Positions 17,641 through 62,181 of a stretch of DNA of 64,000 nucleotides are shown here, in pieces. The stretch covers positions 62,001-126,000 of the IMG/VR virus record IMGVR_UViG_3300035661_000001; one strand, given 5' to 3'. The translations under genes and the position numbers were made by a program. Under the pieces are notes generated by a model. It ran no database searches, was not told where the DNA came from, and worked only from the letters and a program-made list of their open reading frames with translations. The first letter of the stretch is position 1, and each line of letters starts with the position of its first letter.

Positions 17641-18119
17641 TTTTTCAAAAGAACAGGTACAAATGAAAATCTACGAGAATGTTCAGCGGTTTGATAGCAA
17701 AACTGGTAAGCCGTATTTTGTGAAACGATTCAAGGAATTCCGTTGTGATTTTTCCGGTCAACTGATTGACGAGGATGATCTGGAGACCTATTTCTATCCA
17801 TCTTACAATCTGGATTACGAAAGCTCGGATCCCTGTTTCGGATCTTGTGGCGATGAGTATGAGTTCGGTCAGAAACATGACGTCGCTATGTTTGAATTTC
17901 TGAGCGACACCTATCATTTTCGCAATGATATCGATCCTGATGGTCATGGATTTATCGATCAATCTGTTAAAATGATGCAGCACTATCTTCCGGATAGGCT
18001 TTCGTTTGCGGAGATGTGCCGCACTAGCCGCATCGTAACCGCCGAGAAACTCATCGAAAGCGGAGAGATTGCTGCCGATCAACTGTCTCTTTAAGTATAA
18101 ATAGTTCTGATATATTAAT

Positions 18120-18191
18120 GGTTCCATCGTTCAACGGCTAGGACGGCGGCTTCTAACACTGCCTATAAGGGTTCGACTCCCTTTGGAACCA
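18120..18191 (+). tRNA. tRNA with CTA anticodon in the canonical register (possible amber suppressor; alternatively a degenerate Arg-TCT)
   Basis: Acceptor GGTTCCA/TGGAACC, D stem GTTC/GGAC, loop TTCTAAC, T arm AAGGG-TTCGACT-CCCTT. Confidence 0.7.
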
Positions 18192-18213
18192 TCCATTTAA
18201 TTTAAGGGTTTAA

Positions 18214-21560: not shown

Positions 21561-21633
21561 GGGCTGGTGGCGAAATGGCAAGCGCGACGGTTTTAAGAAC
21601 CGTTAAGTGTGGGTTCGAGTCCCACCCAGCCTA
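21561..21633 (+). tRNA. tRNA-Leu(TAA) with a short 5-nt variable loop
   Basis: Acceptor GGGCTGG/CCAGCCT, Leu-type D loop, ACGGT-TTTAAGA-ACCGT, variable TAAGT, A73. Confidence 0.85.
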
Positions 21634-22103
21634 CTGTTTTTACCTTTATTTTTACCACAATATGTTTCAGTTTGAGAATGGCAATTAGGGCATAACAATC
21701 TTAGATTCAACAATTCATTATTGGTATTATCACCATCAATGTGATCTAAATGTAATGCAAGTGGTTTGGAATTCCATTCTGCAATCAAACAGATGGCGCA
21801 TTGATTAATCATCAACTGCTCTTTTAACAATCTGTGTTTTAAACTGTATGAACTTGTATAAGCACTATTCTTAATTAGAATTTCTTCTATTGGCTGTTTG
21901 ATAGCCCAATTATGGGTTTTATATTTAAGATATCCTTGTCCAGTAAAATGACTAGTATCAATACCAAGTCTTTTAACTTTTTGATGAAAAATTTTATAGT
22001 TTCCTCCGGCAGGTACTATTCCCAATTTGTTTAGTACTTCTCGTATAGAGAAACTTGTTTCAACTGCAATCACGAATTCTTTGTCTGAAAATTTCAGTTT
22101 CAT
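21603..22103 (-). mobile_element. HNH homing endonuclease
   Basis: 'LHLDHIDGDNTNNELLNLRLLCPNCHSQT'; 3' end overlaps tRNA-Leu antisense. Confidence 0.9.
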
Positions 22104-22924
22104 GGTAAACTCATATAACAACAGTTTTATAAGTTTACCTTAATAAGAAAATACATAATGTCCATAGATCATGCAAGAATATCAGAAATAGAAAAACTTT
22201 CTTCGTGTGAAAGGATAGCCGGCTATCTTTTTTACAGTAGCAAACTGGCTATGGTCGGTGCTAGGCTTAGAAAAAATGATAGGTCTGATTTCTCTTGGAC
22301 TGATGAAGAACATGAAGAATGGGATTCTATTTGTGATGAGATTGAACCTTGGTGGTATGCCTTGTCTGATGAGGAACACGCGGCTTTAAATGATGTAGAA
22401 GTATTTATGGCAAAATTAACGTGTGATGAATCTGTTTTAGAAGATGACCCATCACGGCAGTACAAAGCGATCAAAAGTTGGCGTTCCTAAAAATCTGCAC
22501 ATGTTTATGCATAAACATATGAAAAAGAAAAAGAAAATTCGCAGTGGATTAATTATGGCGATGTTGAATAGTCGTAAAGGCGGATCCATGAAGAATAAAA
22601 AAGATAAACGAAAAAATGGAAAAAATAAGCAAGAAGCTTATTTAGATGGAGATTACTAAAGTCAAGTTATAGATTTAATGAGGTATAGTATCTCATAATG
22701 TTTGGAAAATACAATGAGTGAGTTAGGTTTTTGTTCTTGTTTTGTTTTGAAAAGTACGGGAAATTGGAAAAAGTCATCTACAGATGACTGGGATTTGGAT
22801 GTAATAGAGCTTTCTGGAAAAGAAAAGCTGCTTGGTCATCGACCTATTGACGGATCAATTTTCAAAATTCTTCAAACTGATGACGGTAAAATTATTGCCG
22901 TTAGCAAAAATAATTGAATTATGT

Positions 22925-22953
22925 AACGGCTACTAGGTTTAATAGTAGCCGTT
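22925..22953. terminator. Hairpin between convergent genes
   Basis: AACGGCTACTA / TAGTAGCCGTT. Confidence 0.65.
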
Positions 22954-22976
22954 GGTATTTATTAGGAAAGAGATAA

Positions 22977-23591
22977 TCAAATTTTCTTTGCTAATTTTTC
23001 TATTTCTTTTTTCAAAATTACAAGTCGAACCCGTTCGCTTGGAGATGCCAGTTTACCCATATTAACAGGGTCTACATAATTTTTAGCTAAAGCAAAAGCT
23101 TGATTTCCCGCATTAGTTAATTGTGGTCCAAGAGCAGCTCCAGCTGATGACATAGAAATAGCATCATTTTGTACGGATGATGCAGCGGCATATACTGGTT
23201 CGAAAATCTTTCTTAAAGATTCTCCGAATGTTTCGACAGTCGGAAACCAAGATGCTTTACCATATTTTTCTCTGATAAAATCAGCTAGATTAGTTCCTGC
23301 CATAACTTTTAAAAATTGATCTCGCATGTAGCCAAATGAAGCTATTGTATTCTTATCCGCAATACCACTAGCAGCATCGGTCAATTTGCCATAAGTTTTC
23401 TGAACATTATTCAAATAATCTGAAACAAAAGTTAAGAGACCACTCTTATCTTTATCTTTTACTATCTGAGTCATGTTTAATAAATTAATATTTAAATCGC
23501 GCATTCCTTTTTGAAGAGCAACAATACCGGGATCAGAAAAAGTATCCTGAGCATTAGATATTTTATACACAATATACGTGGATCGGTTCAT
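22977..23591 (-). CDS. Hypothetical protein, possible virion/internal protein
   Basis: Antisense to early-type neighbours, Ala-rich, K[IL][AS]-type motif. Confidence 0.55.
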   Translation of the reverse strand: MNRSTYIVYKISNAQDTFSDPGIVALQKGMRDLNINLLNMTQIVKDKDKSGLLTFVSDYLNNVQKTYGKLTDAASGIADKNTIASFGYMRDQFLKVMAGTNLADFIREKYGKASWFPTVETFGESLRKIFEPVYAAASSVQNDAISMSSAGAALGPQLTNAGNQAFALAKNYVDPVNMGKLASPSERVRLVILKKEIEKLAKKI

Positions 23592-23628
23592 GGTAATATT
23601 GTAATTTATGCACAGAGATTAGGTCAAT

Positions 23629-24462
23629 ATGTCCAAAAATAAATCGTCTCTTAGAAGATTTTTTTCTTCGTTTTCAAAAGTCGGAAAAAGTATTTGGACT
23701 ACAACTAAAAAATTATCTAAATTTGGATTGGCGGGATTATCTTTTGCTGCTTATGCTTTTTTGTATAATTGGCGGCTAGCACTGCTTATTATGATTTCTG
23801 TGGGATTTCATGAGTCCGGTCATATTTGGGCAATGAAAAAAGCTGGAATAAAAACAAAAGGTTTTTATTTTATTCCATTTATTGGAGGTATAGCTATTGC
23901 TGAAGCGCAGTATTCTAGCTATAAACAGAATGTTTGGGTAGCTATTATGGGACCTGTGTGGGGATGTCTTTTAGCACTTGTTACAGCTGGCGTATATTAT
24001 TATACAAAAAATTCTTTGTTTGCCATAGCTGCTATCTGGATGGCAGCATTAAATCTGATTAACCTAGTACCAATCTCACCTTTGGATGGCGGTCAAATCA
24101 TGAGATCAATTACGTTTTCAATCAATCAAACGGTTGGATTAGTATTTTTGATCTTTTCATTTGCGATATCAGCTAACATAATGTTTGTCCTTCGTATTCG
24201 AGAGTGGGCATTAATTTTTATTGTAGGTGGTATTGAATTGATTTTCGAGTTGTATCTTAGGTACAAGACCAAAAATAAAAAACAATCTAGTTGGTTAACG
24301 GTTGAATTAACCGGCAGTCATTGCCCAACTCCATTAAATTGGAAACAAATAGTATTGTCAACCACATCTTATGTGGTTTTATCTTCAGTGTTGATGATAA
24401 TAATTCTTGTACTTAGAAACATTCCTGATGTAAATCTGGCTCTGTATGCTTTCATTCAATGA
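23629..24462 (+). CDS. M50 family (site-2) intramembrane metalloprotease
   Basis: HExxH 'FHESGH', 'MGP', 'NLINLVPISPLDGG', multiple TM segments. Confidence 0.92.
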   Translation: MSKNKSSLRRFFSSFSKVGKSIWTTTKKLSKFGLAGLSFAAYAFLYNWRLALLIMISVGFHESGHIWAMKKAGIKTKGFYFIPFIGGIAIAEAQYSSYKQNVWVAIMGPVWGCLLALVTAGVYYYTKNSLFAIAAIWMAALNLINLVPISPLDGGQIMRSITFSINQTVGLVFLIFSFAISANIMFVLRIREWALIFIVGGIELIFELYLRYKTKNKKQSSWLTVELTGSHCPTPLNWKQIVLSTTSYVVLSSVLMIIILVLRNIPDVNLALYAFIQ

Positions 24463-24477
24463 GAAAGAATTACTAAA

Positions 24478-24813
24478 ATGAATAAATTTTCATTACTATC
24501 TCTGTTGCTTGTAACTGGTTGCACATGGGGCAGCCCTCCATGCCCCGAACTATCGAACGATGATAAAGATGGAATATATCTTCGAAACTTAGGGTCTGTT
24601 GTAATTGATAATGAATCATGTTCAATTATTGAAACAATCAAAAAAACTGATTGTATTATCCAATAGGGTTGGAACCGCGGTCCATCTTGTAAAGGCGAAT
24701 GGATGAGTTGTAATACACAGGTTCTTACTCGATTTACTAAATGTCCTTCAGGAACATTTTCAAATACAATAACTTATTCTTCAGATAAGTTTCATAGAGA
24801 ACAAGTAGAATGA
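24478..24813 (+). CDS. Lipoprotein interrupted by an in-frame TAG at 24664-24666
   Basis: Lipobox VTGC; frame stays open 48 codons past the TAG, to a TGA overlapping the next ATG. Confidence 0.5.
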
Positions 24814-25319
24814 AATTCATATTTCTAGATTTTGATGGCGTATTAAACAGCGATAAATATTTCGACAGCCCTATTTTTAAAAATGAAACTAAAGGTATGG
24901 GCTGGAATGAGATTATGCTAATCGTTCATCATACCCATCTGGATCGAGATGCAATTCAACTGATAAATCAATTAGTTAACAAATCGGAAGCATCAGTAGT
25001 AGTCTCTTCTACTTGGAGACAAAAATATTCAATTGATGAATTGAATGAAATGTTAACTGCTCGTGGGGCAACTTTTACTATCATTGCAGCGACTCCTATA
25101 CATCGTTGCACTTATGTTGGTTGGGGCATGCAGGAAGTTATACGTGGCCATGAAATTCAAGATTATTTGAATGGAGTTGAAGCTCCAGTTCAATTTGTAA
25201 TTTTGGATGATATCAATAACATGGATCAATTAACCGATCATTTAGTGTTAACAGATGAATCGGTTGGTATTACATCAGCAGATATTGATAAAGCTTTACA
25301 AATCTTAAGCGAGGAATGA
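24810..25319 (+). CDS. HAD-superfamily phosphatase (Swiss-army-knife RNA repair-like HAD)
   Basis: 'IFLDFDGVLN', 'VVSSTWR', 'RGHEI..YL', 'FVILDD'. Confidence 0.85.
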   Translation: MKFIFLDFDGVLNSDKYFDSPIFKNETKGMGWNEIMLIVHHTHLDRDAIQLINQLVNKSEASVVVSSTWRQKYSIDELNEMLTARGATFTIIAATPIHRCTYVGWGMQEVIRGHEIQDYLNGVEAPVQFVILDDINNMDQLTDHLVLTDESVGITSADIDKALQILSEE

Positions 25320-25320
25320 T

Positions 25321-26529
25321 ATGGAAGAGAAAAAATCTGAACTTGATCATAAAGTTGTGCCTGCTGGACAGTCTATCTATGGCATCAATGTTATTGGGCT
25401 TTATTTACCTAGAGCATTAAAACATCATTTGGATACTGGCTCTCCTTTAGACGCCAAAAGTGTAAGTGGTATTCTTTCAATTCCTATTGAAGAGTTATGT
25501 AAATATCTAGAAGATAATGGTGGCGTACGAGGAGTATGCCAATACGATAGCGAATACAGCTATCTATGGAATTATTCTTTCTTAAACATCTCTTACAGTA
25601 AAAAAACTAGTTCTATTAGTATTACAGGATACTTAATGAGTGCTGAGCTAGTGGCGCTCATGAAATCAATTGAAACTAATTTCATATCTAAAAGTAAAAA
25701 GGATTTGGTATTTTCAATTGTTAAATCAAGCCTGGGGCTTGATATTAAAAACATGGGTAATGGATCGTCGCCGCTTATTAAAGATAATTATAATCCAGAA
25801 GTAATTTCTGATTTGGATATCGTTATTGAATCTTTCAAGAGTGCAACACCATCCGGAAGAATATGTATCCTTAATGGAGAGCCTGGTACTGGTAAGACAC
25901 ATTTAGTAAGATCAATGTTATCCGCTATTGATAATGTGTACCTGATTGTTCCTTCTAACCTCATTTCAGCATTAGATAGTCCCGAATTTCTACCTCTTTT
26001 GCTTAGGGTTAAAGAGACTCATGAAAAACCAATTATCTTAATTATTGAAGACGGTGATTCATGTTTAGCTCCAAGAAAGAGTGATAACATGTCTTCAATT
26101 ACATCTCTGTTAAATTTGAGTGACGGTATACTTGGGTCGATCCTTGATATCAAAATGATCATTACCACCAATGCCCAGATTAGAGATGTGGATCAAGCTA
26201 TTATGAGAGTTGGGCGGTTGTGCAAAAATATTGATGTTGGTGCATTGCCTTATGAGCGAGCTAATGCAAGATATCAGCAGTTGATGAAAAACTCAGAAGT
26301 AGTTTTGGATAAGAAAAAGTTTTATACTTTGGCAGAAGTATATAATATTTTCAATGGTAAAAATGAACGTCAGCCGGCGACACCTAATAATTCTAAACGC
26401 TCTATTGGTTTCCAATCAAATATTGGTTTTTCTATTCGTAGTCATGATGAAGTTGATGTCAAATATCATAAATTACTGAATGAAGCGGCTGCTTTAGAAG
26501 AAATAGCTAAGAAAAAAGGCTTGTTGTAG
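25321..26529 (+). CDS. AAA+ ATPase
   Basis: Walker A GEPGTGKT, Walker B IIEDGD, 'LLNLSDG', 'TTN', 'D.AIMRVGR'. Confidence 0.88.
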   Translation: MEEKKSELDHKVVPAGQSIYGINVIGLYLPRALKHHLDTGSPLDAKSVSGILSIPIEELCKYLEDNGGVRGVCQYDSEYSYLWNYSFLNISYSKKTSSISITGYLMSAELVALMKSIETNFISKSKKDLVFSIVKSSLGLDIKNMGNGSSPLIKDNYNPEVISDLDIVIESFKSATPSGRICILNGEPGTGKTHLVRSMLSAIDNVYLIVPSNLISALDSPEFLPLLLRVKETHEKPIILIIEDGDSCLAPRKSDNMSSITSLLNLSDGILGSILDIKMIITTNAQIRDVDQAIMRVGRLCKNIDVGALPYERANARYQQLMKNSEVVLDKKKFYTLAEVYNIFNGKNERQPATPNNSKRSIGFQSNIGFSIRSHDEVDVKYHKLLNEAAALEEIAKKKGLL

Positions 26530-26571
26530 ATTATAGTCTACCCATCGACAGATACTTAATGTCGATGTTGC

Positions 26572-26646
26572 CGGGCAAAAGGTCAGCTGGTTGCAGCCGG
26601 AGTTCTTATAAAGCTCTTGAGGTGGGTTCGATCCCCATTTGCCCGA
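26572..26646 (+). tRNA. tRNA-Ile(TAT), copy 1
   Basis: CGGGCAA/TTGCCCG; GAGTT-CTTATAA-AGCTC; GTGGG-TTCGATC-CCCAT. Confidence 0.85.
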
Positions 26647-26772
26647 CGGAAAATCGTATGAAAAATGATTGAACGATCATATCATTTAATGATATAGTAG
26701 ATGTGAAACATATTAGGTGTTTGGGTTTAATCCCCTCCATCCTCCCAATCCAGTATTTAATATGTTTTCATT

Positions 26773-26855
26773 GGGCGAGTGGTGGAATGGTAGACACAGC
26801 GGACTCAAAATCCGCCGGCAGCAATGTCATGAGGGTTCGACTCCCTCCTTGCCCA
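26773..26855 (+). tRNA. tRNA-Leu(CAA), normal long variable arm
   Basis: GCGGA-CTCAAAA-TCCGC, long variable arm, canonical T loop. Confidence 0.92.
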
Positions 26856-26901
26856 CAATCTTATAGATTCGTATAATAATTATGACTAAAAGGAATCATC
26901 C

Positions 26902-27255
26902 ATGAAAAGACTGCTACTTTCTCTATTAACTGGGTTGGTTTTAGTTGGTTGCGTTGCTCCCATCGAAGAGTCAAAAGAAGTGAATACGCCATCAGAAGAG
27001 GCGGTCGGTGTTCCATCTGATTATTATGTTAAAGATAAGGGCGCAGGCTATGACTGCCTGCCTCAGCTTGTGGAATTGAAACTTCCTAATGGTAATACCA
27101 AAATGGTTCTGATTCCTGTACTTTGCGATGAAAATCCATATTTAGATAAGGGTGATCCTTCTCCAGATGTAACGTCTCCGGAAGATGAGGTCACCGATTC
27201 TGATCCCACAAAATTAATGAAAAATAATGTGGAACCTGTTTCGCCGATGATTTGA
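26902..27255 (+). CDS. Putative lipoprotein
   Basis: Signal peptide with lipobox LVGC; AAGGA upstream. Confidence 0.6.
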   Translation: MKRLLLSLLTGLVLVGCVAPIEESKEVNTPSEEAVGVPSDYYVKDKGAGYDCLPQLVELKLPNGNTKMVLIPVLCDENPYLDKGDPSPDVTSPEDEVTDSDPTKLMKNNVEPVSPMI

Positions 27256-27305
27256 AAAATCATGTCATAAATCATGATATGTTTTAAATGTGGACATCAT
27301 GATTT

Positions 27306-27695
27306 ATGAATAGAAAAATCCTTGCTTTTTTTGAAGTTGCAGCTAGAACGGCTACCAGTAAAATGGATAGGCGTTCTTTTTTGCTTGGTGCCATTGGTAT
27401 TCGTAATGATGGTGTTATGGTACGATCTTTGAATTCCCCGACAGAAAACAAAAATCGTAAAGCTCATGCTGAATGTAAACTTTGCCGTAAGCTTGACTAT
27501 GGTGCTGAGGCAGTTTATGTTGCTAGGGTAAGATTTGATAATTTTCAATTCGGCATGGCTCGACCTTGCTCTTCTTGTAGAAAAATTCTGAAGACTAAAA
27601 AAGTAAAGAAAGTTTTCTACACCATTAGCCAGAGTTCTTATGGCGTAATTGATTTCGGTAAAAATACAGAAGTAATTTATGAAGATAACTTTTAA
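27306..27695 (+). CDS. Zn-dependent cytidine/adenosine deaminase-fold protein
   Basis: HAE ... PCxxC ('HAECKL', 'ARPCSSC'), 'KVFYT'. Confidence 0.85.
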   Translation: MNRKILAFFEVAARTATSKMDRRSFLLGAIGIRNDGVMVRSLNSPTENKNRKAHAECKLCRKLDYGAEAVYVARVRFDNFQFGMARPCSSCRKILKTKKVKKVFYTISQSSYGVIDFGKNTEVIYEDNF

Positions 27696-28125
27696 TAAAC
27701 TTTCTTTATGTAATGAAGAAAGAGATGACGTTCTTAAAGAACGTCATGCAATTATTTACTTCTTAAAAAATCAGGATATCGATACATCAATAATTGATAA
27801 ACTTCGTTCCGAACAACATTGGATATGTGGTGCACCATATAATACAAAAGGCTATTTCGATGAAGAAGCATTTTACAAAGTAATTGAAAATTTGAAATCT
27901 CATGGTTATGATAAAAGACCCCTTCATCAGTTCAAAGAAATTGACGACGATGAGTTTGTCTACGACGAAGAAATCGGAAATGCTTTAAACGAACGATCAA
28001 TGATTATTTCTTTCTTAAAGAGAAATAAGATTAGCTTAATTATTATCAATAGTTTACGGTCAGGCAAACATTGGGCGTTAGGATCTGCATATGGTCCAGG
28101 CGGGTGTTTTGATTATGGCGAATGA
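27679..28125 (+). CDS. Hypothetical protein with internal duplication
   Basis: Two 'L.ER..II.FLK...LRS..HW..G..Y...G.FD' units. Confidence 0.6.
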   Translation: MKITFNKLSLCNEERDDVLKERHAIIYFLKNQDIDTSIIDKLRSEQHWICGAPYNTKGYFDEEAFYKVIENLKSHGYDKRPLHQFKEIDDDEFVYDEEIGNALNERSMIISFLKRNKISLIIINSLRSGKHWALGSAYGPGGCFDYGE

Positions 28126-28160
28126 TATAAATTTTTAATTGAATACATGGTATAAAAATA

Positions 28161-29423
28161 ATGACACACGTATGCGTTATGTTTCCTTATCCGAGTGGTA
28201 ATGGATTGCACATTGGGCATTCTTATAACTATGCCGTTACAGATTCTTATTGCAGATATCTAAGGTTTACTGGAAAGGAAGTCTTTCAGCCTTTTGGATA
28301 TGATGCATTTGGTTTGCCCGCAGAAAATTATGCCCGTTCAGTTGGAGGTAATCCTAAAGATATTACCTATGCTAATATTGATAAGTTCAGAGAACAAATG
28401 GTTCATATGAATACTCAATATCAAGAGTTGCTTATTACATCTGATCCATCTTATCAAAAATGGACACAATGGTTGTTTACCAAGCTTTTGGAAAAAGGCT
28501 TGGCTTATAAATCTTTTGGTGATGTCAATTTTTGTCCTAGTTGTGATACTGTTTTGGCGAGGGAACAGGTAAAAAATGATCATTGTGAAAGATGTCATTC
28601 AAAAATTGAAATTAAACAATTGAATCAATGGTATTTCAAAATTACTGCATATAAAGATCGTTTGATTAAAAATTTGGATAAAATTGATTATCCAGCAAAA
28701 ACTATTAAGTCTCAGCGTAACTGGTTGGAAAATCTTCATGACTGGTGTGTGTCTCGTCAGCGTTCATGGGGATGCCCAATTCCAATTGAAGGCGAGACTG
28801 ATACTTTGGATACTTTTGTAGATAGTTCATTTTATTTTGTAAGATATTGTGATCCTACAAATGAAAACGAATTGTGCGCTAAAGATAAATACAAACAGGT
28901 AGATGTGTATGTGGGTGGGAATGAGCACGCGTGCATGCACTTGATTTATGCCAGATTCATACATATGTTTTTGTATGACCTCGGAATTGTTTCTGAAGAA
29001 GAGCCTTTCAAAAAAGTAATTCATCAGGGAATGATTTTGAATGACGGCGAAAAAATGTCCAAATCAAAAGGAAATGTTATTAATCCCGACTCATACGATC
29101 AGGATGAGTTGAGATTCTATTTGATGTTTATTGGTCATTATTTTGATGGCGGCTCTTGGTCTGATAAAAATATTAGTGGTGTGCGTAGATTTACGGCACG
29201 AACTAAAGAATGGTTGTCGAGAACAGGAGAAGAATCAATCAATGATCACCTGTCTAGATTTCAAGATCAGATTTTCAATTTTACTGAAAATTTCAAATTC
29301 AATCGAGTAGTCAGTGAGTTTATGATTTTGGTTAATCAACATCGAACCAAAAATATTACTGTCGCCGATAGAGATAGATTGATTTCTTTGTTGAAAATCT
29401 ATATGCCAGGATTTACTGTATGA
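28161..29423 (+). CDS. leuS: Minimal leucyl-tRNA synthetase (no CP1 editing, leucine-specific or C-terminal domain)
   Basis: 'MFPYPSG.GLHIGH', 'GYDAFGLPAEN', Zn knuckle, 'QRNW' joined to 'DW.VSRQR.WG.PIP', 'ETDTLDTFVDSS', 'GG.EHA..HL.YARF', 'KMSKSKGN'. Confidence 0.95.
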   Translation: MTHVCVMFPYPSGNGLHIGHSYNYAVTDSYCRYLRFTGKEVFQPFGYDAFGLPAENYARSVGGNPKDITYANIDKFREQMVHMNTQYQELLITSDPSYQKWTQWLFTKLLEKGLAYKSFGDVNFCPSCDTVLAREQVKNDHCERCHSKIEIKQLNQWYFKITAYKDRLIKNLDKIDYPAKTIKSQRNWLENLHDWCVSRQRSWGCPIPIEGETDTLDTFVDSSFYFVRYCDPTNENELCAKDKYKQVDVYVGGNEHACMHLIYARFIHMFLYDLGIVSEEEPFKKVIHQGMILNDGEKMSKSKGNVINPDSYDQDELRFYLMFIGHYFDGGSWSDKNISGVRRFTARTKEWLSRTGEESINDHLSRFQDQIFNFTENFKFNRVVSEFMILVNQHRTKNITVADRDRLISLLKIYMPGFTV

Positions 29424-30028
29424 ATATAAAAACTTTAATGTTTACATTAATTTTAATTGGTTGTTCACCTTCCGAAAAAGAATTAAATTTAACGGCAGAT
29501 AAAACAAGAATTAAAGTTTGTTCTCCTATAGGAGAGTTTGTTAGTTTACCAATTTATGATTGGAATACAGGAAGTCCATCTAAATATGGCTATAAATTAG
29601 CTACACAGTGTGACCCTAATAAAAAAGTCGAAATCTCTATTGAAAGAAATAATTGTTATAATCAGGCGCCATATGAGGTGATTATTACAAATACAACTGA
29701 TCGTAGTATTAAAAATACTACAATAAATATTGAGGCATATGAGCCAGGCATCTCTACTAATGTATTAGAAAATGATACAAGATATATGGAGATCGTATCT
29801 CCATTCATTATTAAATCAAATGAATTTAGTAAAAGTTGTACTGCCATATATTATGGTACAGAATATAAAGAAAATAAAATTGATTATGATTTAAAAGTTT
29901 TAGGGGCAAAGTATTTAGATAACCTGGATGCATATTCAAAAATTCCAAAAATGTTACCAGCATCTTATAAAGTAAAAATAAAAATTGTTAATGTGGAATT
30001 TTATTCTTCTGATAAAGAAATTCCATAG
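29420..30028 (+). CDS. Putative lipoprotein
   Basis: Lipobox LIGC. Confidence 0.55.
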   Translation: MNIKTLMFTLILIGCSPSEKELNLTADKTRIKVCSPIGEFVSLPIYDWNTGSPSKYGYKLATQCDPNKKVEISIERNNCYNQAPYEVIITNTTDRSIKNTTINIEAYEPGISTNVLENDTRYMEIVSPFIIKSNEFSKSCTAIYYGTEYKENKIDYDLKVLGAKYLDNLDAYSKIPKMLPASYKVKIKIVNVEFYSSDKEIP

Positions 30029-30039
30029 TCTAATTTCTC

Positions 30040-30435
30040 TCAATAAAAATCTTTTGCAGTTTTCTTCCTATGACAGTTAGCGCATCTTACTTCACATTTT
30101 TCTATTTCTTTTTCTAATTGTTTAATAGAGCTTCTGTTTATAATCATTACAGAAATATTTGATTTTTTTACATATTTGATATGATCAAATTCTAGACAAA
30201 CAGGATTCGATTCTCCACAATCAACACAAGGATGTTTTGTTAAATATTCATAAACAAAAAATTTTGTTTTATTTCGATATTCTTTAGTGTATCCTTTATC
30301 TCTACTACGATTATTATATATTTTATTATGGCATTTTTTACAATTATGACGACGAGAGATTTTATTTCTTAGTGGAAACTCAGTTATGTTTTTCTCACAC
30401 TTACAAATTCGGCAAATTTTAGTAATTTCATTCAT
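30040..30435 (-). mobile_element. HNH homing endonuclease
   Basis: 'HPCVDCGE....LEFDH...IEKCEVRCANCHRKKT'; probable start MNEITK. Confidence 0.85.
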
Positions 30436-30460
30436 ATTAAATATATAACATAGGCGCATA

Positions 30461-31477
30461 ATGAACAAAGATCTTTTATTAGCTAAACCCAATTTACCCA
30501 GCGGGTGGTTGGATACTTCCGTGGGCGAGCCATATTCTGTTAAAGAAAATTTATTTGAATATTTTAATTTATATGACTATAGCCTATCAATGAGAGATAG
30601 CTCAATATTTGAATATCCAAATCCTAGCGGCTATAAACCTTTAGTTGATTTATTGGAGAATCGATATGGTGCTCCAGTTATAATTACCAACGGTGCTAAA
30701 CAAGGATTAGCTGCAGCGTTATATACTTTGAAAAAAATGGGTAAACGAAAAGTAGGAATGAGAACTCCTTTCTGGGCTCTTCTTCCTCCGCTTATTCATA
30801 TGCAAGGTTTACACCCTACATCTTATGAAGAATCTGATTGTAATCTGTTGGTTATGCCTAATAACCCAGATGGATTTACTATGACTCCACATGACGTAAA
30901 TGAGTTTGTATCGGAGTGCATTGATAATCACAAACCATTGATTCATGATGCGGCATATTATAGCCATATTTATTTGCCAGAATCTTATCCTCTCGATCCC
31001 ATCGGTGATGTCCAACTCTTCTCTATGAGTAAGATGCTCGGTCTTTCTGGTCTTCGTTTAGGGTATGCGGTATGTCACAATCATATTTATTATAAGTTTA
31101 TCCAAGAATATATGGAAGCTATGACTGTGGGTGTTTCAAACATTTCACAAATTCTTTTGTTTGATCTTCTGACCCAGATGTCAGAGAATGGTGAATCATC
31201 AGAAGCATTTGAAAAAATGGCGTACCATTCAATTCAGAAATCTAAAAGTATTCTTAAACAAATAAACCCAGAAGTATTACTAGTACCAGATAATATAGAA
31301 AAAATTCCGGGTATGTTTGCTTGGTTGAAGATTGGAGAAAAAGCTAATTTCAAAAAATCCAAAGTTCATGTAGTAGAAGGAACTCATTTCGGAGTTCCTG
31401 GCATGGTACGAATTAATTTAGCTTTAGATCATCAGACTTTGCAAGAAGTAGTGGATCGTTTAAACTCTGTGGTGTAA
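30461..31477 (+). CDS. PLP-dependent aminotransferase class I/II
   Basis: 'ITNGAKQGL', 'PNNPDG', 'DAAY', 'SMSKMLGLSGLRLGY' (PLP Lys). Confidence 0.9.
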   Translation: MNKDLLLAKPNLPSGWLDTSVGEPYSVKENLFEYFNLYDYSLSMRDSSIFEYPNPSGYKPLVDLLENRYGAPVIITNGAKQGLAAALYTLKKMGKRKVGMRTPFWALLPPLIHMQGLHPTSYEESDCNLLVMPNNPDGFTMTPHDVNEFVSECIDNHKPLIHDAAYYSHIYLPESYPLDPIGDVQLFSMSKMLGLSGLRLGYAVCHNHIYYKFIQEYMEAMTVGVSNISQILLFDLLTQMSENGESSEAFEKMAYHSIQKSKSILKQINPEVLLVPDNIEKIPGMFAWLKIGEKANFKKSKVHVVEGTHFGVPGMVRINLALDHQTLQEVVDRLNSVV

Positions 31478-32621: not shown

Positions 32622-33206
32622 TAATTTTTAAAGCCGATTTCTTCACTATTGGATCAGATGATGATTACAATCAAAAAGATTTTCTAAAGAATCTAGAAAA
32701 TAATTTCCAATATTTTAGTGCTACCCTTCATACTCATGATGACTATAATCACTATGATCCTTGCTATATATTTGAAAGCATAGATGACGCTTTAGATGAA
32801 GCCGCAAACCATGAGGCTGTTGGTGTAAAAATTTCTAAATTCGTTTTGGATGAGGATGATTGTAAAGAACTTTTAATTTCTAGGAATTTGAAAGTTCCTT
32901 CAGAAAAAGTATATTATTCTTATAATGAAACGACCCAAGAGTTGGAAGAATTCCAATTAAAAATTTTCCTGTAATAATCTATGTTAAAAAATATTAAAGT
33001 AGCTAAACTGATTGAAGAACTTCAGAAATATGATCAAGAATCTACAATTTCTGAAGTTAATTTATCTGGTGCAGAATTGATTTCTTGGAGAAATGATCCG
33101 AAGAACCCATCGTGGGTAAGATATAAAAACAGATATAAACATGATGACAAACCATGCTCATGTGGATATGTTCCATGGGATGGTTTACCTTTTTGAAAAT
33201 AAAATT

Positions 33207-34547
33207 ATGACTAGAGTTAGATTTGCTCCTAGCCCAACAGGAACGCTTCATGTTGGCGGGGTGCGTACGGCATTGTACAATTGGTTATGGGCTCGCAAAA
33301 ACGGTGGGAAATTTATTCTCCGCATTGAAGATACCGATCAAGTCCGTAATGATCCTGCTAGTTATAATAACATTTTAACAGCTCTGGATTGGCTTGGACT
33401 AGATTGGGATGAGGGTCCTAATGTTGGTGGAGATCATGGTCCTTATACTCAATCAGAGCGCCGTGACTTGTATAAAACTTGTGCTAATCTTTTAATAGAC
33501 TCCGGTAAAGCTTACCGTTGCAATTGTAGTTCTGACGATCTCGATCGCATGAGGCACGAATTTCGAGGCAGAAATGTTAAAGATACTTGGAAATACCCGG
33601 GCGTTTGTCGAGATAAAAACGTTTCTTCAGATGTACCTCATGTAGTGAGATTGATTGTTGATCCTGGGCAAGTCGTCTCATTTGACGATCTTGTTTTTGG
33701 TAATATCAAAACTCCTACATCCTCTCTTTATGATTTTGTTATCATGAGAGAGAATGGCGTGCCGCTGTACAATTTCGCGGCAGTCATTGATGATTACCTT
33801 ATGGATATTTCTTTGGTAGGTCGTGGTAAAGATCATTTGATTAATACTCCTCCTCAGATTCTAATCTACCAAGCTTTAGGTTGGAAGACTCCTGATTTTG
33901 CACATTTACCAATGTTGCTTAATCAAGATAATGTAAAACTCTCCAAGAGAGACGGCGCGGTCTCGGTGGATCAATTCAGAGAACTTGGGTTTTCAGCCAA
34001 TGGGCTTTTGAATTATTTAATGAGATTTGGTTGGGCTCATGGTGATAAAGAGCTTTTCTCCATGCAGGAGATGATTGATTTATTCTCTTGGGATAAATGT
34101 AAAAAATCAGATGGTAAGTTTGATTTCACAAAAGCCACGGCAATCAATGGTAAAAATCTTATCAATGATCAGTTGGTACCTGATAAGGTATATACTGATG
34201 ACTTGAAGAAGTTCATCCCTGATATTACCCCCGACAAAATAGCTCTAGTAAGGGCTAAGGCTAAAACTTACAAGGAGTCGGCAGCCTTCTTGTCATTCTT
34301 CACTGACGGCTCTCTTAATGGTCCCCCGGCGGATATGGATCCTGACGATAAGGCTCATGTCGAGACGTTTTTGAATATGTATCCTGTTTTGATTGTCAAT
34401 AAAGACAGAAATGCATTTTTGGACCTTACAAGGAAGTATTGTGAGTCTCATGATGTTCCTTTTGCAAGGATTTCTCAGGCGTTAAGATATTGGTTTACAC
34501 ACAGAACGGTTGGACCTGATATCTATCAGATAATGACTTATCTGTAA
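33207..34547 (+). CDS. gltX: Glutamyl-tRNA synthetase
   Basis: 'RVRFAPSPTGTLHVGG', 'RIEDTD', 'WDEGP', 'YTQSER', 'YNFA.VIDD', 'KLSKR'; true start is Met23 of the listed ORF. Confidence 0.95.
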   Translation: MTRVRFAPSPTGTLHVGGVRTALYNWLWARKNGGKFILRIEDTDQVRNDPASYNNILTALDWLGLDWDEGPNVGGDHGPYTQSERRDLYKTCANLLIDSGKAYRCNCSSDDLDRMRHEFRGRNVKDTWKYPGVCRDKNVSSDVPHVVRLIVDPGQVVSFDDLVFGNIKTPTSSLYDFVIMRENGVPLYNFAAVIDDYLMDISLVGRGKDHLINTPPQILIYQALGWKTPDFAHLPMLLNQDNVKLSKRDGAVSVDQFRELGFSANGLLNYLMRFGWAHGDKELFSMQEMIDLFSWDKCKKSDGKFDFTKATAINGKNLINDQLVPDKVYTDDLKKFIPDITPDKIALVRAKAKTYKESAAFLSFFTDGSLNGPPADMDPDDKAHVETFLNMYPVLIVNKDRNAFLDLTRKYCESHDVPFARISQALRYWFTHRTVGPDIYQIMTYL

Positions 34548-34583: not shown

Positions 34584-35774
34584 ATGGATCATCGCGAAAT
34601 CGGCAAGAGGATGGACCTTCTCATGTTCCATCCTCTTAGTCCTGGCTGTCCCATCTGGTTACCTGCTGGGAATTTCTTGTATTCTACCCTCTCGGATAAG
34701 ATTCGACAACTCAACAAGCGTAATGGATATGTTGAAGTCCGTACGCCTATGTTGTTTAAGTCGGATCTTTTCAAGATGTCAGGGCATATGGATCACTATC
34801 GTGATAATATGTATCTCATTGGAGACTCCGAAGATGAGAGCGCATTGAAACCCATGAACTGTCCTTGCCACATGTTGATTTTCAAATCAAAAAAGTGGTC
34901 ATATAGAGAGCTGCCTTATCGTATTCATGACCAAGGCGTTCTTCACAGAAATGAAACGTCCGGGTCATTGTCAGGCTTGATTAGGGTTAGATCTTTTTGT
35001 CAAGATGATGGTCACTTGTTTGTAACGAAGGATCAGTTAATTGGTGAAATTCAATCCATTATCAAGATGGTAAACCAGGTGTATCGAGTTTTTGATATGC
35101 CTGTCCGTGCTATGGTGTCAACCAGACCCGAATCATTCATGGGCGATCCTCTCTTGTGGGATCATGCCGAGTCTGTTTTACAAGAAATCCTCAAAAACAA
35201 TTCCATGGAATTTGAAATTGATGCTGGCGCCGGAGCCTTCTACGGTCCCAAGATTGATTTCTATATTAAAGATTCGTCTGGTCGAGAATTTCAGACGGCA
35301 ACGATTCAGCTTGATTTTCAGTTGCCATTGAAGTTTGACCTATCATATCAGGACGCTAGTAATGAATTGCTAGCCCCGATTGTTATTCATAGGGCAATTT
35401 TTGGATCTTTCGAAAGATTCATTGCTATTCTGTTAGAACATACGCAGGGTAAACTTCCACTTTGGCTGGCACCCATCCAAGGCGCGTTGATCCCAATCAA
35501 CTCAAGGAATGAGCAATTCTGCCGAGACCTGGCAGACAAATGGAATGCGGTTGGTGGTAGGTTTATTGTCAGTGACGATAACTCTCCGTTGGCGGGCAAG
35601 ATCAAACAAGCTCATGAAAAACTAATTCCTTATTCCCTAGTCGTTGGGGATCGGGAAGTTCAGGCGAATCAGGTTGCAATTAGAGAATTAAAATCCTCTA
35701 TGTCTCCTGATGATTTTTGGCAAAAACATATTGCAAATTCGTTAGAATTCAATTTTTATGACTCCCAAGACTAG
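34584..35774 (+). CDS. thrS: Threonyl-tRNA synthetase lacking the N-terminal TGS/editing domains
   Basis: Starts at 'DHREIGK'; 'KPMNCPCH', 'HRNE.SG.LSGL.RVR.F.QDD.H', 'GAFYGPKID', 'IHRAIFGSFERF', 'WLAP'. Confidence 0.95.
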   Translation: MDHREIGKRMDLLMFHPLSPGCPIWLPAGNFLYSTLSDKIRQLNKRNGYVEVRTPMLFKSDLFKMSGHMDHYRDNMYLIGDSEDESALKPMNCPCHMLIFKSKKWSYRELPYRIHDQGVLHRNETSGSLSGLIRVRSFCQDDGHLFVTKDQLIGEIQSIIKMVNQVYRVFDMPVRAMVSTRPESFMGDPLLWDHAESVLQEILKNNSMEFEIDAGAGAFYGPKIDFYIKDSSGREFQTATIQLDFQLPLKFDLSYQDASNELLAPIVIHRAIFGSFERFIAILLEHTQGKLPLWLAPIQGALIPINSRNEQFCRDLADKWNAVGGRFIVSDDNSPLAGKIKQAHEKLIPYSLVVGDREVQANQVAIRELKSSMSPDDFWQKHIANSLEFNFYDSQD

Positions 35775-62089: not shown

Positions 62090-62164
62090 CGAGTAAAAGG
62101 TCAGCTGGTTGCAGCCGGAGTTCTTATAAAGCTCTTGAGGTGGGTTCGATCCCCATTTACTCGA
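62090..62164 (+). tRNA. tRNA-Ile(TAT), copy 2
   Basis: Identical to 26572-26646 except compensated acceptor pairs (CGAGTAA/TTACTCG). Confidence 0.85.
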
Positions 62165-62181
62165 CTGAAAGAAATTTAAAC

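What the first reader, a model, noticed from the sequence alone, without database searches (positions are those of the whole stretch)
21561..29423. Candidate orthogonal pair: a minimal 420-aa LeuRS and a tRNA-Leu(UAA) that has lost its long variable arm
Seen: LeuRS (28161-29423) keeps HIGH, KMSKS and the first Zn knuckle. 'QRNW' is fused directly to 'LENLHDW.VSRQR' at about 28724, so the CP1 editing domain is cleanly excised. The segment after 'PIP' and the leucine-specific insert are also missing, and the protein ends just after the anticodon-binding helices. The same window carries tRNA-Leu(UAA) (21561-21633) with Leu features (D loop, G37, A73) but only a 5-nt variable loop, next to a normal long-arm Leu(CAA). 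Established: bacterial LeuRS is about twice this size; its C-terminal domain contacts the tRNA elbow/variable-arm region; CP1 clears mischarged Ile/norvaline; CP1 loss is known in some Mycoplasma. Inference: the phage enzyme lost the module that reads the type II tRNA shape and may charge the armless tRNA. That would give a host-independent, low-fidelity Leu channel and a natural near-minimal class I synthetase.
Basis: partly seen in the sequence, partly recalled or inferred. Interest (0 to 1): 0.88.

Follow-up and report, generated by a model that had tools for sequence, protein, structure and literature searches.

The report
Huge-phage mini LeuRS with Leu tRNAs
A huge bacteriophage encodes a conserved leucyl-tRNA synthetase stripped to half the normal size, always found beside leucine tRNA genes that include both normal and 'armless' forms; the armless tRNA is real but also occurs in phages that have no synthetase, so a private enzyme-tRNA pair is not shown.

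Summary
Window 28161-29423 encodes a 420-aa bacterial-type LeuRS. It keeps HIGH, KMSKS, the ZN1 knuckle and the leucine pocket. It lacks the N-terminal helix, CP1, the segment after PIP, the leucine-specific domain and the C-terminal tRNA-binding domain. tRNA(UAA) at 21561-21633 is a clean cloverleaf with a 5-nt variable loop.

The enzyme belongs to a large phage-only family of 405-540 aa under strong purifying selection (dN/dS about 0.05). Its model is confident (pLDDT 92.5) and superposes on Mycoplasma mobile LeuRS (TM 0.91). Across divergent huge-phage contigs its only conserved neighbours are Leu tRNA genes. Short-arm ones occur in 13 of the 18 loci with Leu tRNAs nearby, and long-arm ones in all 18. 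The short tRNAs carry the Leu-lineage signature and covary as functional tRNAs. The arm loss predates the HNH insertion.

The strict 'orthogonal pair' reading is not supported. Armless tRNA-Leu also occurs in T5-like, Bacillus and Streptomyces phages with no LeuRS, and in Streptomyces coelicolor, where a full-length LeuRS charges it.

Most likely this is an editing-free, shape-blind LeuRS that serves the phage's whole tRNA-Leu set. It is a new variant of a known kind.

The parts
21561..21633 (+). tRNA-Leu(UAA), type I (armless): 5-nt variable loop, 3-bp D stem, A14, A15:U48, G18G19, G37, G1:U72, A73
   Evidence: ARAGORN; Rfam RF00005 64.6 bits. The orthologue in L165 3921-3994 has the same acceptor, D arm and V loop, and compensatory changes in the anticodon stem.
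21603..22121 (-). HNH homing endonuclease ORF. It is part of an insertion of about 880 bp (21636-22517) placed directly 3' of the tRNA, and its last codons run antisense into the tRNA.
   Evidence: Pfam HNH and PHROG 10822 at E 2e-53. The insertion is absent from L165.
26572..26647 (+). tRNA-Ile(UAU), syntenic neighbour of the long-arm tRNA-Leu
   Evidence: ARAGORN; the same order is seen in L165.
26773..26855 (+). [quoted passage not shown]
   Evidence: ARAGORN and Rfam.
27306..27695 (+). Cytidine/adenosine deaminase-fold protein with weak similarity to TadA. It keeps its place upstream of LeuRS in the closest relatives.
   Evidence: Pfam PF00383 at E 6.6e-8; NCBIfam TadA at E 0.004; L165-L168 gene tables.
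28161..29423 (+). Minimal leucyl-tRNA synthetase, 420 aa: Rossmann catalytic core, ZN1 and a truncated anticodon-binding helical bundle
   Evidence: AF2 pLDDT 92.5. Foldseek best match 3ziu at TMq 0.91. dN/dS about 0.05 against L165.
28209..28220 (+). HIGH motif (aa 17-20)
   Evidence: invariant across the family.
28533..28595 (+). ZN1 zinc knuckle, CPSC...CERC (aa 125-145)
28713..28745 (+). CP1 excision junction QRNW-LEN-LHDW. About 190 aa of E. coli LeuRS (225-416) are replaced by 2-3 residues, and the M. mobile nonapeptide linker is also absent.
28740..28772 (+). DWCVSRQRSWG, the homologue of the E. coli 419-429 peptide reported to bind the flipped A73. It is one of the most conserved blocks of the family.
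   Evidence: Alignments. The role of the peptide is taken from the discussion of PMC6614811.
28776..28817 (+). PIPIEGETDTLDTF junction. The segment after PIP (Ec 434-483, with two CxxC pairs in the 508-aa relatives) is deleted.
29028..29066 (+). GMIL-NDG-E-KMSKS. The leucine-specific domain is replaced by a tripeptide aligned with GKDG of M. mobile, followed directly by KMSKS (29052-29066).
   Evidence: PMC3643597.
29400..29423 (+). C-terminal end ...YMPGFTV plus TGA. The protein stops at about Ec P766, so the last helices of the anticodon-binding domain and the whole C-terminal domain are absent.
   Evidence: orthologues end at the same place.

Best explanation
The window comes from a 452-kb huge-phage contig. 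It carries a translation island with 16 tRNAs, a GluRS-like gene, a class II synthetase and this LeuRS.

The 420-aa protein is a member of a phage-restricted family of minimal LeuRS. The family keeps only the 'main body': the catalytic Rossmann fold with HIGH and KMSKS, the ZN1 knuckle, the intact leucine pocket, the peptide that binds the discriminator A73, and most of the helical anticodon-binding domain.

I infer that it activates leucine and transfers it, without any post-transfer editing, to the phage's own tRNA-Leu set. It would recognise these tRNAs mainly through the acceptor end (A73) and the tRNA core. Because it lacks the LSD and the CTD, the two modules that measure the variable arm and clamp the elbow, it would be indifferent to whether the tRNA has a long arm. 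It could therefore serve both the type II tRNA-Leu(CAA) and the type I tRNA-Leu(UAA).

The likely benefit is extra or host-independent decoding of leucine codons. UUA and UUG make up 57% of the Leu codons in this AT-rich genome.

The armless tRNA is a true tRNA-Leu descendant kept by selection. It is a widespread phage trait, not a device specific to this enzyme.

Shown: the anatomy, the conservation, the synteny, the tRNA ancestry and the timing of the HNH insertion. Inferred: catalytic activity, substrate range and lack of fidelity.
For: Identity and integrity:
- LeuRS is by far the best family and M. mobile LeuRS the best solved structure.
- The E. coli pocket and catalytic positions M40, Y43, D80, F493, S496, Y499, E532, H533 and H537 are invariant in alignment A1.
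- The model is confident: pLDDT 92.5, pTM 0.91.

Selection and spread:
- More than 120 clusters at 90% identity, 404-472 aa long, are 70-92% identical to the window protein.
- 77 viral loci encode relatives, on contigs of up to 608 kb in IMG/VR and 780 kb in the protein collection.
- dN 0.057 against dS 1.13 versus L165.
- All 37 family members examined lack the LSD; 36 lack a CTD (L037 has a C-terminal extension that aligns there) and 35 have nothing at the CP1 site (L058 and L061 carry an uncharacterised insert of about 110 aa).
- None of the 80 best hits in 185,579 species genomes is a mini form.
- At 50% clustering, a single full-length representative (429 aa) aligns end to end.

Link to tRNA-Leu:
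- Of 17 neighbouring window proteins queried, none is conserved next to the enzyme in the other loci; apart from LeuRS itself only the mobile HNH recurs (6 loci, inside tRNA arrays) and two proteins have one hit each.
- Leu tRNAs lie nearer to the enzyme than other tRNAs do: median 0.9 kb (short) and 1.4 kb (long) against 3.3 kb, Mann-Whitney p 7e-11.
- Arrays of 4-7 Leu tRNAs directly precede the gene in L002, L008, L013, L031, L057 and L064.

The short tRNAs are functional and of Leu descent:
- All 19 cloverleaf pairs show compensatory changes.
- The table below compares short Leu tRNAs with other type I tRNAs of the same loci, Fisher p 1e-3 to 9e-18.

| Feature | Short Leu | Other type I |
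|---|---|---|
| A73 | 31/33 | 100/151 |
| G1:U72 | 23/33 | 20/151 |
| D stem of 3 bp or fewer | 33/33 | 35/151 |
| A15:U48 | 27/33 | 59/151 |
| C3:G70 | 22/33 | 41/151 |

- The nearest neighbour of a short Leu tRNA is another Leu tRNA in 32 of 34 cases.

Shape-blindness is plausible:
- The LSD senses variable-arm size, and GKDG can replace it (PMC3643597).
- The CTD binds the elbow and the variable arm (PMC3561953).
- The variable arm and the anticodon hold no identity elements in Aquifex, and a minihelix is charged there (PMC2377443).

Codon use.
Against: - Deleting the CTD abolished aminoacylation in T. thermophilus and E. coli LeuRS (PMC3561953).
- Deleting the CP1 bridge abolished it in another LeuRS (PMC4138327 abstract).
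- This enzyme lacks even the M. mobile nonapeptide linker. Activity therefore cannot be taken for granted.
- LeuRS paralogues are known that make Leu-AMP and bind tRNA but do not charge it (Sulfolobaceae LeuRS-I, cited in PMC9437257).
- The synteny statistics treat related phages as independent. Only 10 kb on each side could be inspected, so tRNAs elsewhere in genomes of 0.3-0.7 Mb are unseen.
- No biochemical data exist for any family member.
Confidence: 0.55

Rival explanations
1. Orthogonal pair. The mini-LeuRS has lost the ability to handle type II tRNA-Leu and charges the armless tRNA-Leu specifically. Host LeuRS cannot charge that tRNA. Together they form a private, low-fidelity leucine channel.
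For: - Short-arm Leu tRNAs sit next to the enzyme in 13 loci across deep divergence, including the 508-541-aa forms.
- The closest relative keeps the short tRNA.
- The lost modules are those that sense the variable arm and the elbow.
- E. coli LeuRS could not charge the type I tRNA-Leu(CAA) of S. coelicolor (PMC6614811).
Against: - Long-arm Leu tRNAs are present in all 18 loci with Leu tRNAs near the enzyme, and they lie just as close.
- Five loci have only long-arm ones, as do L166-L168.
- T5-like phages, Proteus phage 1, TsarBomba and Wakanda carry type I tRNA-Leu of the same architecture, yet none has a LeuRS hit. Host enzymes presumably charge such tRNAs.
- A full-length LeuRS charges type I tRNA-Leu in Streptomyces, and removing the arm from a type II tRNA did not harm charging there.
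Confidence: 0.12
2. Non-canonical LeuRS paralogue. The protein binds tRNA-Leu and/or makes leucyl-adenylate but does not aminoacylate. It might act as a regulator, a tRNA chaperone or sequestering factor, or a donor of activated leucine to another acceptor.
For: - It lacks a CTD, a CP1 bridge or linker and an LSD, each of which matters for charging in model enzymes.
- There are precedents: Sulfolobaceae LeuRS-I and haloarchaeal LeuRS2.
- Related phages also carry bare synthetase fragments, such as a 165-aa LysRS core next to LeuRS in L166.
Against: - The family fully conserves HIGH, KMSKS, the leucine pocket, the A73-binding peptide and the anticodon-binding bundle.
- The DG of the GKDG-like mini-linker, which suffices for charging in E. 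coli LeuRS, is conserved.
- The gene is tightly and co-directionally linked to tRNA-Leu genes with a near-invariant A73.
Confidence: 0.2
3. The tRNA and the enzyme are unrelated. The armless tRNA-Leu is one of many odd phage tRNAs, perhaps selected to escape nucleases or defences that recognise type II tRNAs, and the host LeuRS charges it. The mini-LeuRS merely adds LeuRS capacity for ordinary tRNA-Leu.
For: - Armless tRNA-Leu occurs in phages that have no LeuRS.
- The same huge phages hold 34 long-arm tRNAs with Asn, Cys, Thr, Met, Gln, His or Arg anticodons, so tRNA shape is generally fluid there.
Against: - Short Leu tRNAs cluster at the LeuRS gene as tightly as long ones do (median 0.9 kb). 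Ser tRNAs are never short (0 of 13) and only 1 of 6 Tyr tRNAs is.
- No bacterial nuclease specific for type II tRNAs was examined here.
Confidence: 0.12
4. Decaying gene or assembly artefact. The 420-aa ORF is a truncated pseudogene, or a fragment of a longer gene read through a stop.
For: The score is below the TIGR00396 cut-off.
Against: - The same boundaries recur in more than 100 clusters and 50 or more contigs. Stop codons vary (TAA, TGA, TAG), downstream genes are unrelated, and dN/dS is about 0.05.
- No CTD-like or CP1-like sequence lies downstream or anywhere else in the window.
- The model is a compact, confident fold.
Confidence: 0.01

Closest known systems
Mycoplasma mobile LeuRS (PDB 3ZIU), the 'exceptionally small' natural LeuRS of 637 aa
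   Same: - It is a bacterial-type LeuRS with no CP1 editing domain and no leucine-specific domain.
- The LSD is replaced by a tiny linker: GKDG there, NDG here, aligned.
- It is the best sequence match (E 3e-86) and the best structural match (TMq 0.91).
- It mischarges Ile (PMC3643597).
   Different: - M. mobile keeps the N-terminal region, a nonapeptide CP1 substitute (KEEIDGKIT), the segment after PIP, the full anticodon-binding domain and the C-terminal tRNA-binding domain.
- The phage enzyme lacks all of these and is about 215 aa shorter.
- The M. mobile enzyme is the sole cellular LeuRS of its organism and serves type II tRNAs.
Streptomyces coelicolor LeuRS with type I tRNA-Leu(CAA) and type II tRNA-Leu (Fan et al. 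2019, PMC6614811)
   Same: [quoted passage not shown] The type I tRNA has a 5-nt variable loop whose length matters.
   Different: - ScoLeuRS is full length and unusually long, and its LSD is the module that enables type I charging. The phage enzyme has no LSD.
- A73 is not an identity element in Streptomyces, whereas it is near-invariant in the phage tRNAs.
Type I tRNA-Leu of T5-like phages (Escherichia phage T5_ev212, Proteus phage 1), Bacillus phage TsarBomba and Streptomyces phage Wakanda
   Same: The tRNA architecture is the same as in the window: 5-nt variable loop, 3-bp D stem, AAUUGG-type D loop, A73 and often G1:U72. It is often paired with a long-arm tRNA-Leu in the same array.
   Different: These phages encode no LeuRS: no Bacillus, Streptomyces, Escherichia or Proteus phage is among the 52 records matched. 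Their armless tRNAs must rely on host LeuRS.
Metazoan mitochondrial tRNA-Leu(UUR) and mitochondrial LeuRS
   Same: It is the classical case of a type I tRNA-Leu with a dedicated bacterial-type LeuRS. By my recollection the editing site is degenerate in the human enzyme.
   Different: The mitochondrial LeuRS keeps the CP1 fold, the LSD and the CTD. No type II tRNA-Leu is present in that compartment.
Sulfolobaceae LeuRS-I and haloarchaeal LeuRS2, duplicated LeuRS with impaired charging
   Same: Each is an extra LeuRS copy with a disrupted editing domain or C-terminal region, and its role is uncertain.
   Different: They are archaeal-type, near full length and not linked to tRNA genes. The phage family is bacterial-type and drastically reduced.

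Membership tests
Bacterial-type leucyl-tRNA synthetase (class Ia, TIGR00396) | Class I signature motifs HIGH and KMSKS | tested here: met
   HIGH at aa 17-20 and KMSKS at aa 298-302. H17, G19, H20, K298 and K301 are invariant across 35-37 family members, and M299 is nearly invariant.
Bacterial-type leucyl-tRNA synthetase (class Ia, TIGR00396) | LeuRS is the best-scoring synthetase family, and the leucine pocket residues are conserved | tested here: met
   leuS_bact at E 9.9e-119 against ValRS at 4.6e-46. Ec M40, Y43, D80, F493, S496, Y499, E532, H533 and H537 are invariant in A1.
Bacterial-type leucyl-tRNA synthetase (class Ia, TIGR00396) | Score above the curated equivalog cut-off (548.4 bits) | tested here: not met
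   397.8 bits, because four modules are missing.
Bacterial-type leucyl-tRNA synthetase (class Ia, TIGR00396) | CP1 editing domain inserted after ZN1 | tested here: not met
   Ec 225-416 is absent and the junction is QRNW-LEN-LHDW.
Bacterial-type leucyl-tRNA synthetase (class Ia, TIGR00396) | Leucine-specific domain before KMSKS | tested here: not met
   Ec 570-617 is replaced by NDG.
Bacterial-type leucyl-tRNA synthetase (class Ia, TIGR00396) | C-terminal tRNA-binding domain that contacts the elbow | tested here: not met
   The protein ends at about Ec 766. No CTD-like sequence lies elsewhere in the window.
Bacterial-type leucyl-tRNA synthetase (class Ia, TIGR00396) | Forms Leu-tRNA-Leu | not testable with these tools
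   This needs an enzyme assay.
M. mobile-type minimal LeuRS | No CP1 and no LSD; a short DG-containing linker before KMSKS | tested here: met
   Residue-level alignment to 3ziu. G296, the G of the DG, is invariant in the family, and the family consensus at this site reads GMILxDGxKMSKS.
M. mobile-type minimal LeuRS | Nonapeptide CP1 substitute and a retained C-terminal domain | tested here: not met
   There is a gap opposite KEEIDGKIT, and the alignment stops at 3ziu residue 521 of 637.
Type I (short variable loop) tRNA-Leu | Leu anticodon on a cloverleaf with a 4-5-nt variable loop | tested here: met
   UAA anticodon and a 5-nt loop.
Type I (short variable loop) tRNA-Leu | Descent from, or identity set of, tRNA-Leu: A73, U8-A14, A15:U48, G18G19, 3-bp D stem | tested here: met
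   All are present in the window tRNA. They are enriched in the 33-34 short Leu tRNAs compared with other type I tRNAs.
Type I (short variable loop) tRNA-Leu | Is charged with leucine | not testable with these tools
   By elimination only: no G3:U70 (AlaRS), no long arm (SerRS), and an anticodon unsuited to synthetases that read the anticodon.
Orthogonal synthetase/tRNA pair | Exclusive co-occurrence of the special tRNA with the special enzyme | tested here: not met
   Long-arm Leu tRNAs always accompany the enzyme. Armless tRNA-Leu is found in phages without LeuRS.
Orthogonal synthetase/tRNA pair | No cross-charging with the host enzyme or host tRNAs | not testable with these tools
   This needs aminoacylation assays with host components.

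The most novel reading that the evidence does not exclude
The mini-LeuRS is the smallest natural LeuRS that still charges tRNA. Having shed every module that reads tRNA shape, it recognises essentially the acceptor end. Together with armless tRNA-Leu that host LeuRS (or host nucleases directed at type II tRNAs) handle poorly, it gives huge phages a leucine-decoding channel that keeps working when host tRNA-Leu or LeuRS is disabled. In effect this would be a natural near-orthogonal minimal class Ia pair.
Probability: 0.15. Interest if true: 0.85.

Novelty: new variant of a known kind. Interest (0 to 1): 0.64.

Why it matters
Bacterial LeuRS is thought to need its C-terminal domain, and either CP1 or a linker in its place, to charge tRNA. 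A conserved, strongly selected family of 405-430 aa that lacks CP1, the LSD and the CTD challenges that view.

If the family is active, it defines the minimal working core of a class Ia synthetase and shows how little is needed to recognise tRNA-Leu. It would also be a compact, editing-free scaffold for engineering synthetase/tRNA pairs.

The tight LeuRS/tRNA-Leu gene module is a concrete, testable example of the general idea that huge phages charge 'their own tRNA variants' (Al-Shayeb et al. 2020).

Armless tRNA-Leu recurs in unrelated phages: T5-like, Bacillus, Streptomyces and huge phages. I found no paper in the searchable library that discusses this, and it raises the question of what selects against the long arm in phage tRNAs.

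Tried and rejected
1. Missing LeuRS modules supplied in trans or by read-through. tblastn of full-length E. coli LeuRS against the window, L001 and L002 found only the one gene. Orthologues stop at the same motif with different stop codons and unrelated downstream genes. Rejected.

2. Stop-codon recoding in this window. Making TAG a sense codon adds little ORF length. The window reads well in code 11 (79% coding), although a tRNA(CUA) is present. There is no sign that it affects this gene.

3. Conserved protein partners next to LeuRS. Of 17 neighbouring window proteins, only the mobile HNH recurs (6 loci) and two others have one hit each; none keeps a place beside LeuRS. A deaminase is kept, but only in the closest relatives.

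4. G1:U72 as a phage-specific identity mark. Dropped, because E. coli tRNA-Leu(UAA) has it too (discussion of PMC6614811), as do T5, TsarBomba and Wakanda tRNA-Leu. It is a Leu(UAA)-lineage trait.

5. Genome-wide co-occurrence test. Not feasible. A blastn screen with tRNA arrays was too unspecific for huge-phage controls, but it revealed the T5-like cases.

I reran it without those rows.

7. Literature. Eight searches found no paper on a phage LeuRS of this kind or on phage type I tRNA-Leu.

8. Mini forms in cellular genomes. None appears among the 80 best loci of the GTDB scan.

Full report
**What is there**

ARAGORN finds 16 tRNA genes in the window. They include tRNA(UAA) at 21561-21634 (74 nt) and tRNA-Leu(CAA) at 26773-26856 (84 nt). 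Rfam's tRNA model gives the first its highest score in the window: 64.6 bits, E 9.5e-12.

The cloverleaf of tRNA(UAA) has these features:
- a 7-bp acceptor stem with G1:U72, and discriminator A73;
- a 3-bp D stem and a D loop with G18G19;
- G37;
- a 5-nt variable loop.

The CAA tRNA has a nearly identical D arm but a normal long variable arm.

ORF 28161-29423 (420 aa) is a LeuRS. TIGR00396 matches at E 9.9e-119, against 4.6e-46 for the next family. The 397.8 bits are below the 548.4 equivalog cut-off. The best solved relative is the CP1-less Mycoplasma mobile LeuRS, 3ZIU (E 3e-86).

Aligned to E. coli LeuRS fetched from NC_000913, the phage protein lacks:
- Ec 1-34;
- Ec 225-416, the CP1 domain;
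- Ec 434-483, the segment after PIP;
- Ec 570-617, the leucine-specific domain (LSD);
- Ec 767-860, the end of the anticodon-binding domain plus the C-terminal domain (CTD).

It keeps HIGH, the ZN1 CxxC...CxxC, KMSKS and the leucine-pocket positions. No other LeuRS piece exists in the window.

**It is a conserved phage family, not a wreck**

The window is part of IMG/VR contig UViG_3300035661_000001, 452 kb long. Evidence for a conserved family:
- The 634-kb huge phage LR745206 has a 422-aa orthologue (77% identity) that ends at the same ...YMPGF motif. The 735-kb phage LR756501 has a 508-aa version with the same end.
- The protein search returned more than 120 clusters of 404-472 aa at 70-92% identity.
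- IMG/VR gave 77 loci.
- All 37 representatives spanning 35-92% identity lack the LSD. Thirty-six lack a CTD, and 35 have nothing at the CP1 site. The exceptions are L037, whose C-terminal extension aligns to the CTD region, and L058 and L061, which carry an uncharacterised insert of about 110 aa at the CP1 site. Only the more complete forms of 508-542 aa keep the segment after PIP, and only the 541-542-aa forms keep the N-terminal helix as well.
- Against the closest relative, L165 (92% amino-acid identity), dN is 0.057 and dS is 1.13.
- AlphaFold2 gives pLDDT 92.5 and pTM 0.91. Foldseek superposes the model on 3ZIU with TMq 0.91.
- The 80 best loci from 185,579 species genomes are all ordinary LeuRS genes interrupted by CP1.
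- At 50% clustering, a single full-length representative (429 aa) aligns end to end. The next hits are fragments or proteins of about 500-640 aa that match in two or three stretches, and then full-size LeuRS.

**Link to tRNA-Leu genes**

Of 17 neighbouring window proteins, none keeps a place beside the enzyme in the other loci. Apart from LeuRS itself, only the mobile HNH recurs (6 loci, within tRNA arrays), and two proteins have a single hit each. tRNA-Leu genes do keep that place.
- In L002, L008, L013, L031, L057 and L064, arrays of 4-7 Leu tRNAs directly precede the LeuRS gene.
- Within 10 kb, Leu tRNAs lie at a median of 0.9 kb (short) and 1.4 kb (long) from the gene. Other tRNAs lie at 3.3 kb (Mann-Whitney p 7e-11).
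- Of 28 loci with any tRNA nearby, 18 have Leu tRNAs. Thirteen of these have short-arm ones and all 18 have long-arm ones.

**The armless tRNAs are functional tRNA-Leu descendants**

An alignment of 34 short Leu-anticodon tRNAs folds into the cloverleaf, and all 19 pairs are supported by compensatory changes. They share the hallmarks of the long-arm Leu tRNAs and differ from other type I tRNAs of the same phages (Fisher p 1e-3 to 9e-18):

| Feature | Short Leu | Long Leu | Other type I |
|---|---|---|---|
| A73 | 31/33 | 53/53 | 100/151 |
| G1:U72 | 23/33 | 25/53 | 20/151 |
| D stem of 3 bp or fewer | 33/33 | 53/53 | 35/151 |
| A15:U48 | 27/33 | 53/53 | 59/151 |
| C3:G70 | 22/33 | 40/53 | 41/151 |

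With the anticodon and variable region removed, the nearest neighbour of a short Leu tRNA is another Leu tRNA in 32 of 34 cases. Ser tRNAs are never short (0 of 13), and one of six Tyr tRNAs is.

**The HNH question**

L165 is syntenic with the window. At the orthologous site it has a 74-nt short tRNA with the same acceptor stem, D arm and variable loop (UAAGU) and a nearly identical T arm. Its anticodon is CAA, and its anticodon stem has been remodelled with compensation. No HNH lies beside it.

Window 21636-22517, which holds the HNH ORF and a 110-aa ORF, is an insertion that begins right after the tRNA. The arm loss is therefore older than the HNH insertion and independent of it.

**Why the 'orthogonal pair' reading is only partly supported**

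In its favour:
- The LSD is reported to sense the size of the variable-arm loop, and GKDG can replace it (PMC3643597).
- The CTD binds the G19:C56 elbow and the variable arm (PMC3561953).
- E. coli LeuRS could not charge the natural type I tRNA-Leu(CAA) of Streptomyces coelicolor (PMC6614811).

Against it:
- The enzyme never occurs with short tRNAs alone, and five loci (plus L166-L168) show only long ones.
- Type I tRNA-Leu of the same build is present in several phages: Escherichia phage T5_ev212 (UAA, with G1:U72 and A73), Proteus phage 1 (UAA and UAG), Bacillus phage TsarBomba (UAG) and Streptomyces phage Wakanda (CAA). No Escherichia, Proteus, Bacillus or Streptomyces phage is among the 52 phage records matched by the LeuRS query.
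- In S. coelicolor a full-length LeuRS charges both tRNA types, and deleting the arm of the type II tRNA did no harm.
- The same huge phages carry 34 long-arm tRNAs with Asn, Cys, Thr, Met, Gln, His or Arg anticodons. Variable-arm length is unusually fluid in their tRNA sets.

**Most likely mechanism**

Most likely, the protein is an editing-free LeuRS 'main body'. It would recognise tRNA-Leu through the acceptor end and the tRNA core, and it would be indifferent to the variable arm, so it could serve the phage's whole tRNA-Leu set. Three points bear on this:
- The peptide DWCVSRQRSWG is among the best conserved blocks of the family. Its E. coli counterpart is said to hold the flipped A73.
- A73 is near-invariant in the tRNAs.
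- The window's two Leu tRNAs read UUA and UUG, which make up 57% of Leu codons here.

The main doubt is whether a LeuRS can charge at all without a CTD and a CP1 linker. CTD deletion abolishes charging in the E. coli and T. thermophilus enzymes, and LeuRS paralogues that do not charge tRNA exist. I put 0.55 on the main reading, 0.2 on a non-canonical function, and 0.12 each on the strict orthogonal pair and on unrelated roles for enzyme and tRNA.

**Novelty**

Al-Shayeb et al. 2020 state only in general terms that huge phages may charge their own tRNA variants. Eight literature searches found nothing on this enzyme family or on phage type I tRNA-Leu.

Each component has a precedent. M. mobile has a CP1-less, LSD-less LeuRS. 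Mitochondria, Streptomyces and T5-like phage records have type I tRNA-Leu. The further loss of the CTD, of the linker and of part of the anticodon-binding domain is new as far as I could establish, and so is the conserved LeuRS/tRNA-Leu gene module. I therefore classify it as a new variant of a known kind.

Noticed in passing
window 18119-18195: A tRNA with anticodon CUA, which ARAGORN labels 'Pyl'; it is an amber suppressor. TAG is the rarest stop codon, used by 7 of 76 ORFs of 100 aa or more. ORF-length statistics give no sign of TAG recoding in this window. A similar tRNA(CUA) is present in L009.
   Followed up: partly
window 21636-22517: An insertion of about 880 bp relative to the closest relative, L165. 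It carries an HNH endonuclease (21603-22121, minus strand) and a 110-aa ORF, and it sits immediately 3' of tRNA-Leu(UAA). The last codons and the stop of the HNH ORF lie inside the tRNA gene, antisense. HNH homologues also sit inside tRNA arrays of other loci, for example L064 4406-4891.
   Followed up: yes
window 27704-28169 and 29428-30457: Two more insertions relative to L165 flank the LeuRS gene. One is a 148-aa ORF with no family match. The other holds a lipoprotein-like 202-aa ORF and a second HNH endonuclease (30040-30492, minus strand).
   Followed up: partly
L166 9503-10000 (also L167 and L168): Directly upstream of the LeuRS orthologue lies a 165-189-aa ORF that matches only the catalytic-core segment of LysRS: residues 144-291 of 496, E 3e-58. 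Bare synthetase fragments appear to be a theme in these phages.
   Followed up: no
window 27306-27695: A deaminase-fold protein (PF00383; weak TadA match at E 0.004) sits directly upstream of LeuRS and keeps that place in L165-L168. Some related phages carry tRNA-Leu(AAG), a possible substrate for A34 deamination.
   Followed up: no
window 33141-34547 and 34584-35774: Two further synthetase genes lie nearby. One is a 468-aa GluRS/GlnRS-type class I enzyme (PF00749, E 5e-88). The other is a 396-aa class II enzyme with an HGTP anticodon domain, HisRS-like in size. The region is a translation island.
   Followed up: no
window 26572-26647 and 62090-62165: Two tRNA-Ile genes have the anticodon UAU. 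Bacteria usually read AUA with a lysidine-modified CAU tRNA.
   Followed up: no
L001 3550-3636, L008 8270-8356, L045 13422-13509, L031 7158-7241, L040 6851-6937 and others: Related huge phages carry tRNAs with long variable arms but Asn(GUU), Cys(GCA), Thr(UGU), Met(CAU), Gln(UUG), His or Arg anticodons: 34 cases among about 290 tRNAs. Several recur in different phages. Some may be ARAGORN artefacts or contain introns.
   Followed up: no
L058 9992-11551, L061 5325-6917: LeuRS variants of 520-531 aa carry an insert of about 110 aa at the CP1 site. It may be a CP1 remnant or an unrelated insertion.
   Followed up: no
L169 2996-3072, L170 1001-1159, L082 1473-1548, L083 1495-1568: Cultured phages carry type I tRNA-Leu genes, annotated simply as tRNA-Leu: T5_ev212, Proteus phage 1, TsarBomba and Wakanda. 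No Escherichia, Proteus, Bacillus or Streptomyces phage appears among the records matched by the LeuRS query. I found no paper that discusses this.
   Followed up: partly
window 41937-42839 (minus strand), 53142-53963: Further homing-endonuclease genes lie in the window: LAGLIDADG and tandem GIY-YIG. In L165, a LAGLIDADG gene sits just upstream of the short tRNA-Leu, on the opposite side from the window's HNH.
   Followed up: no
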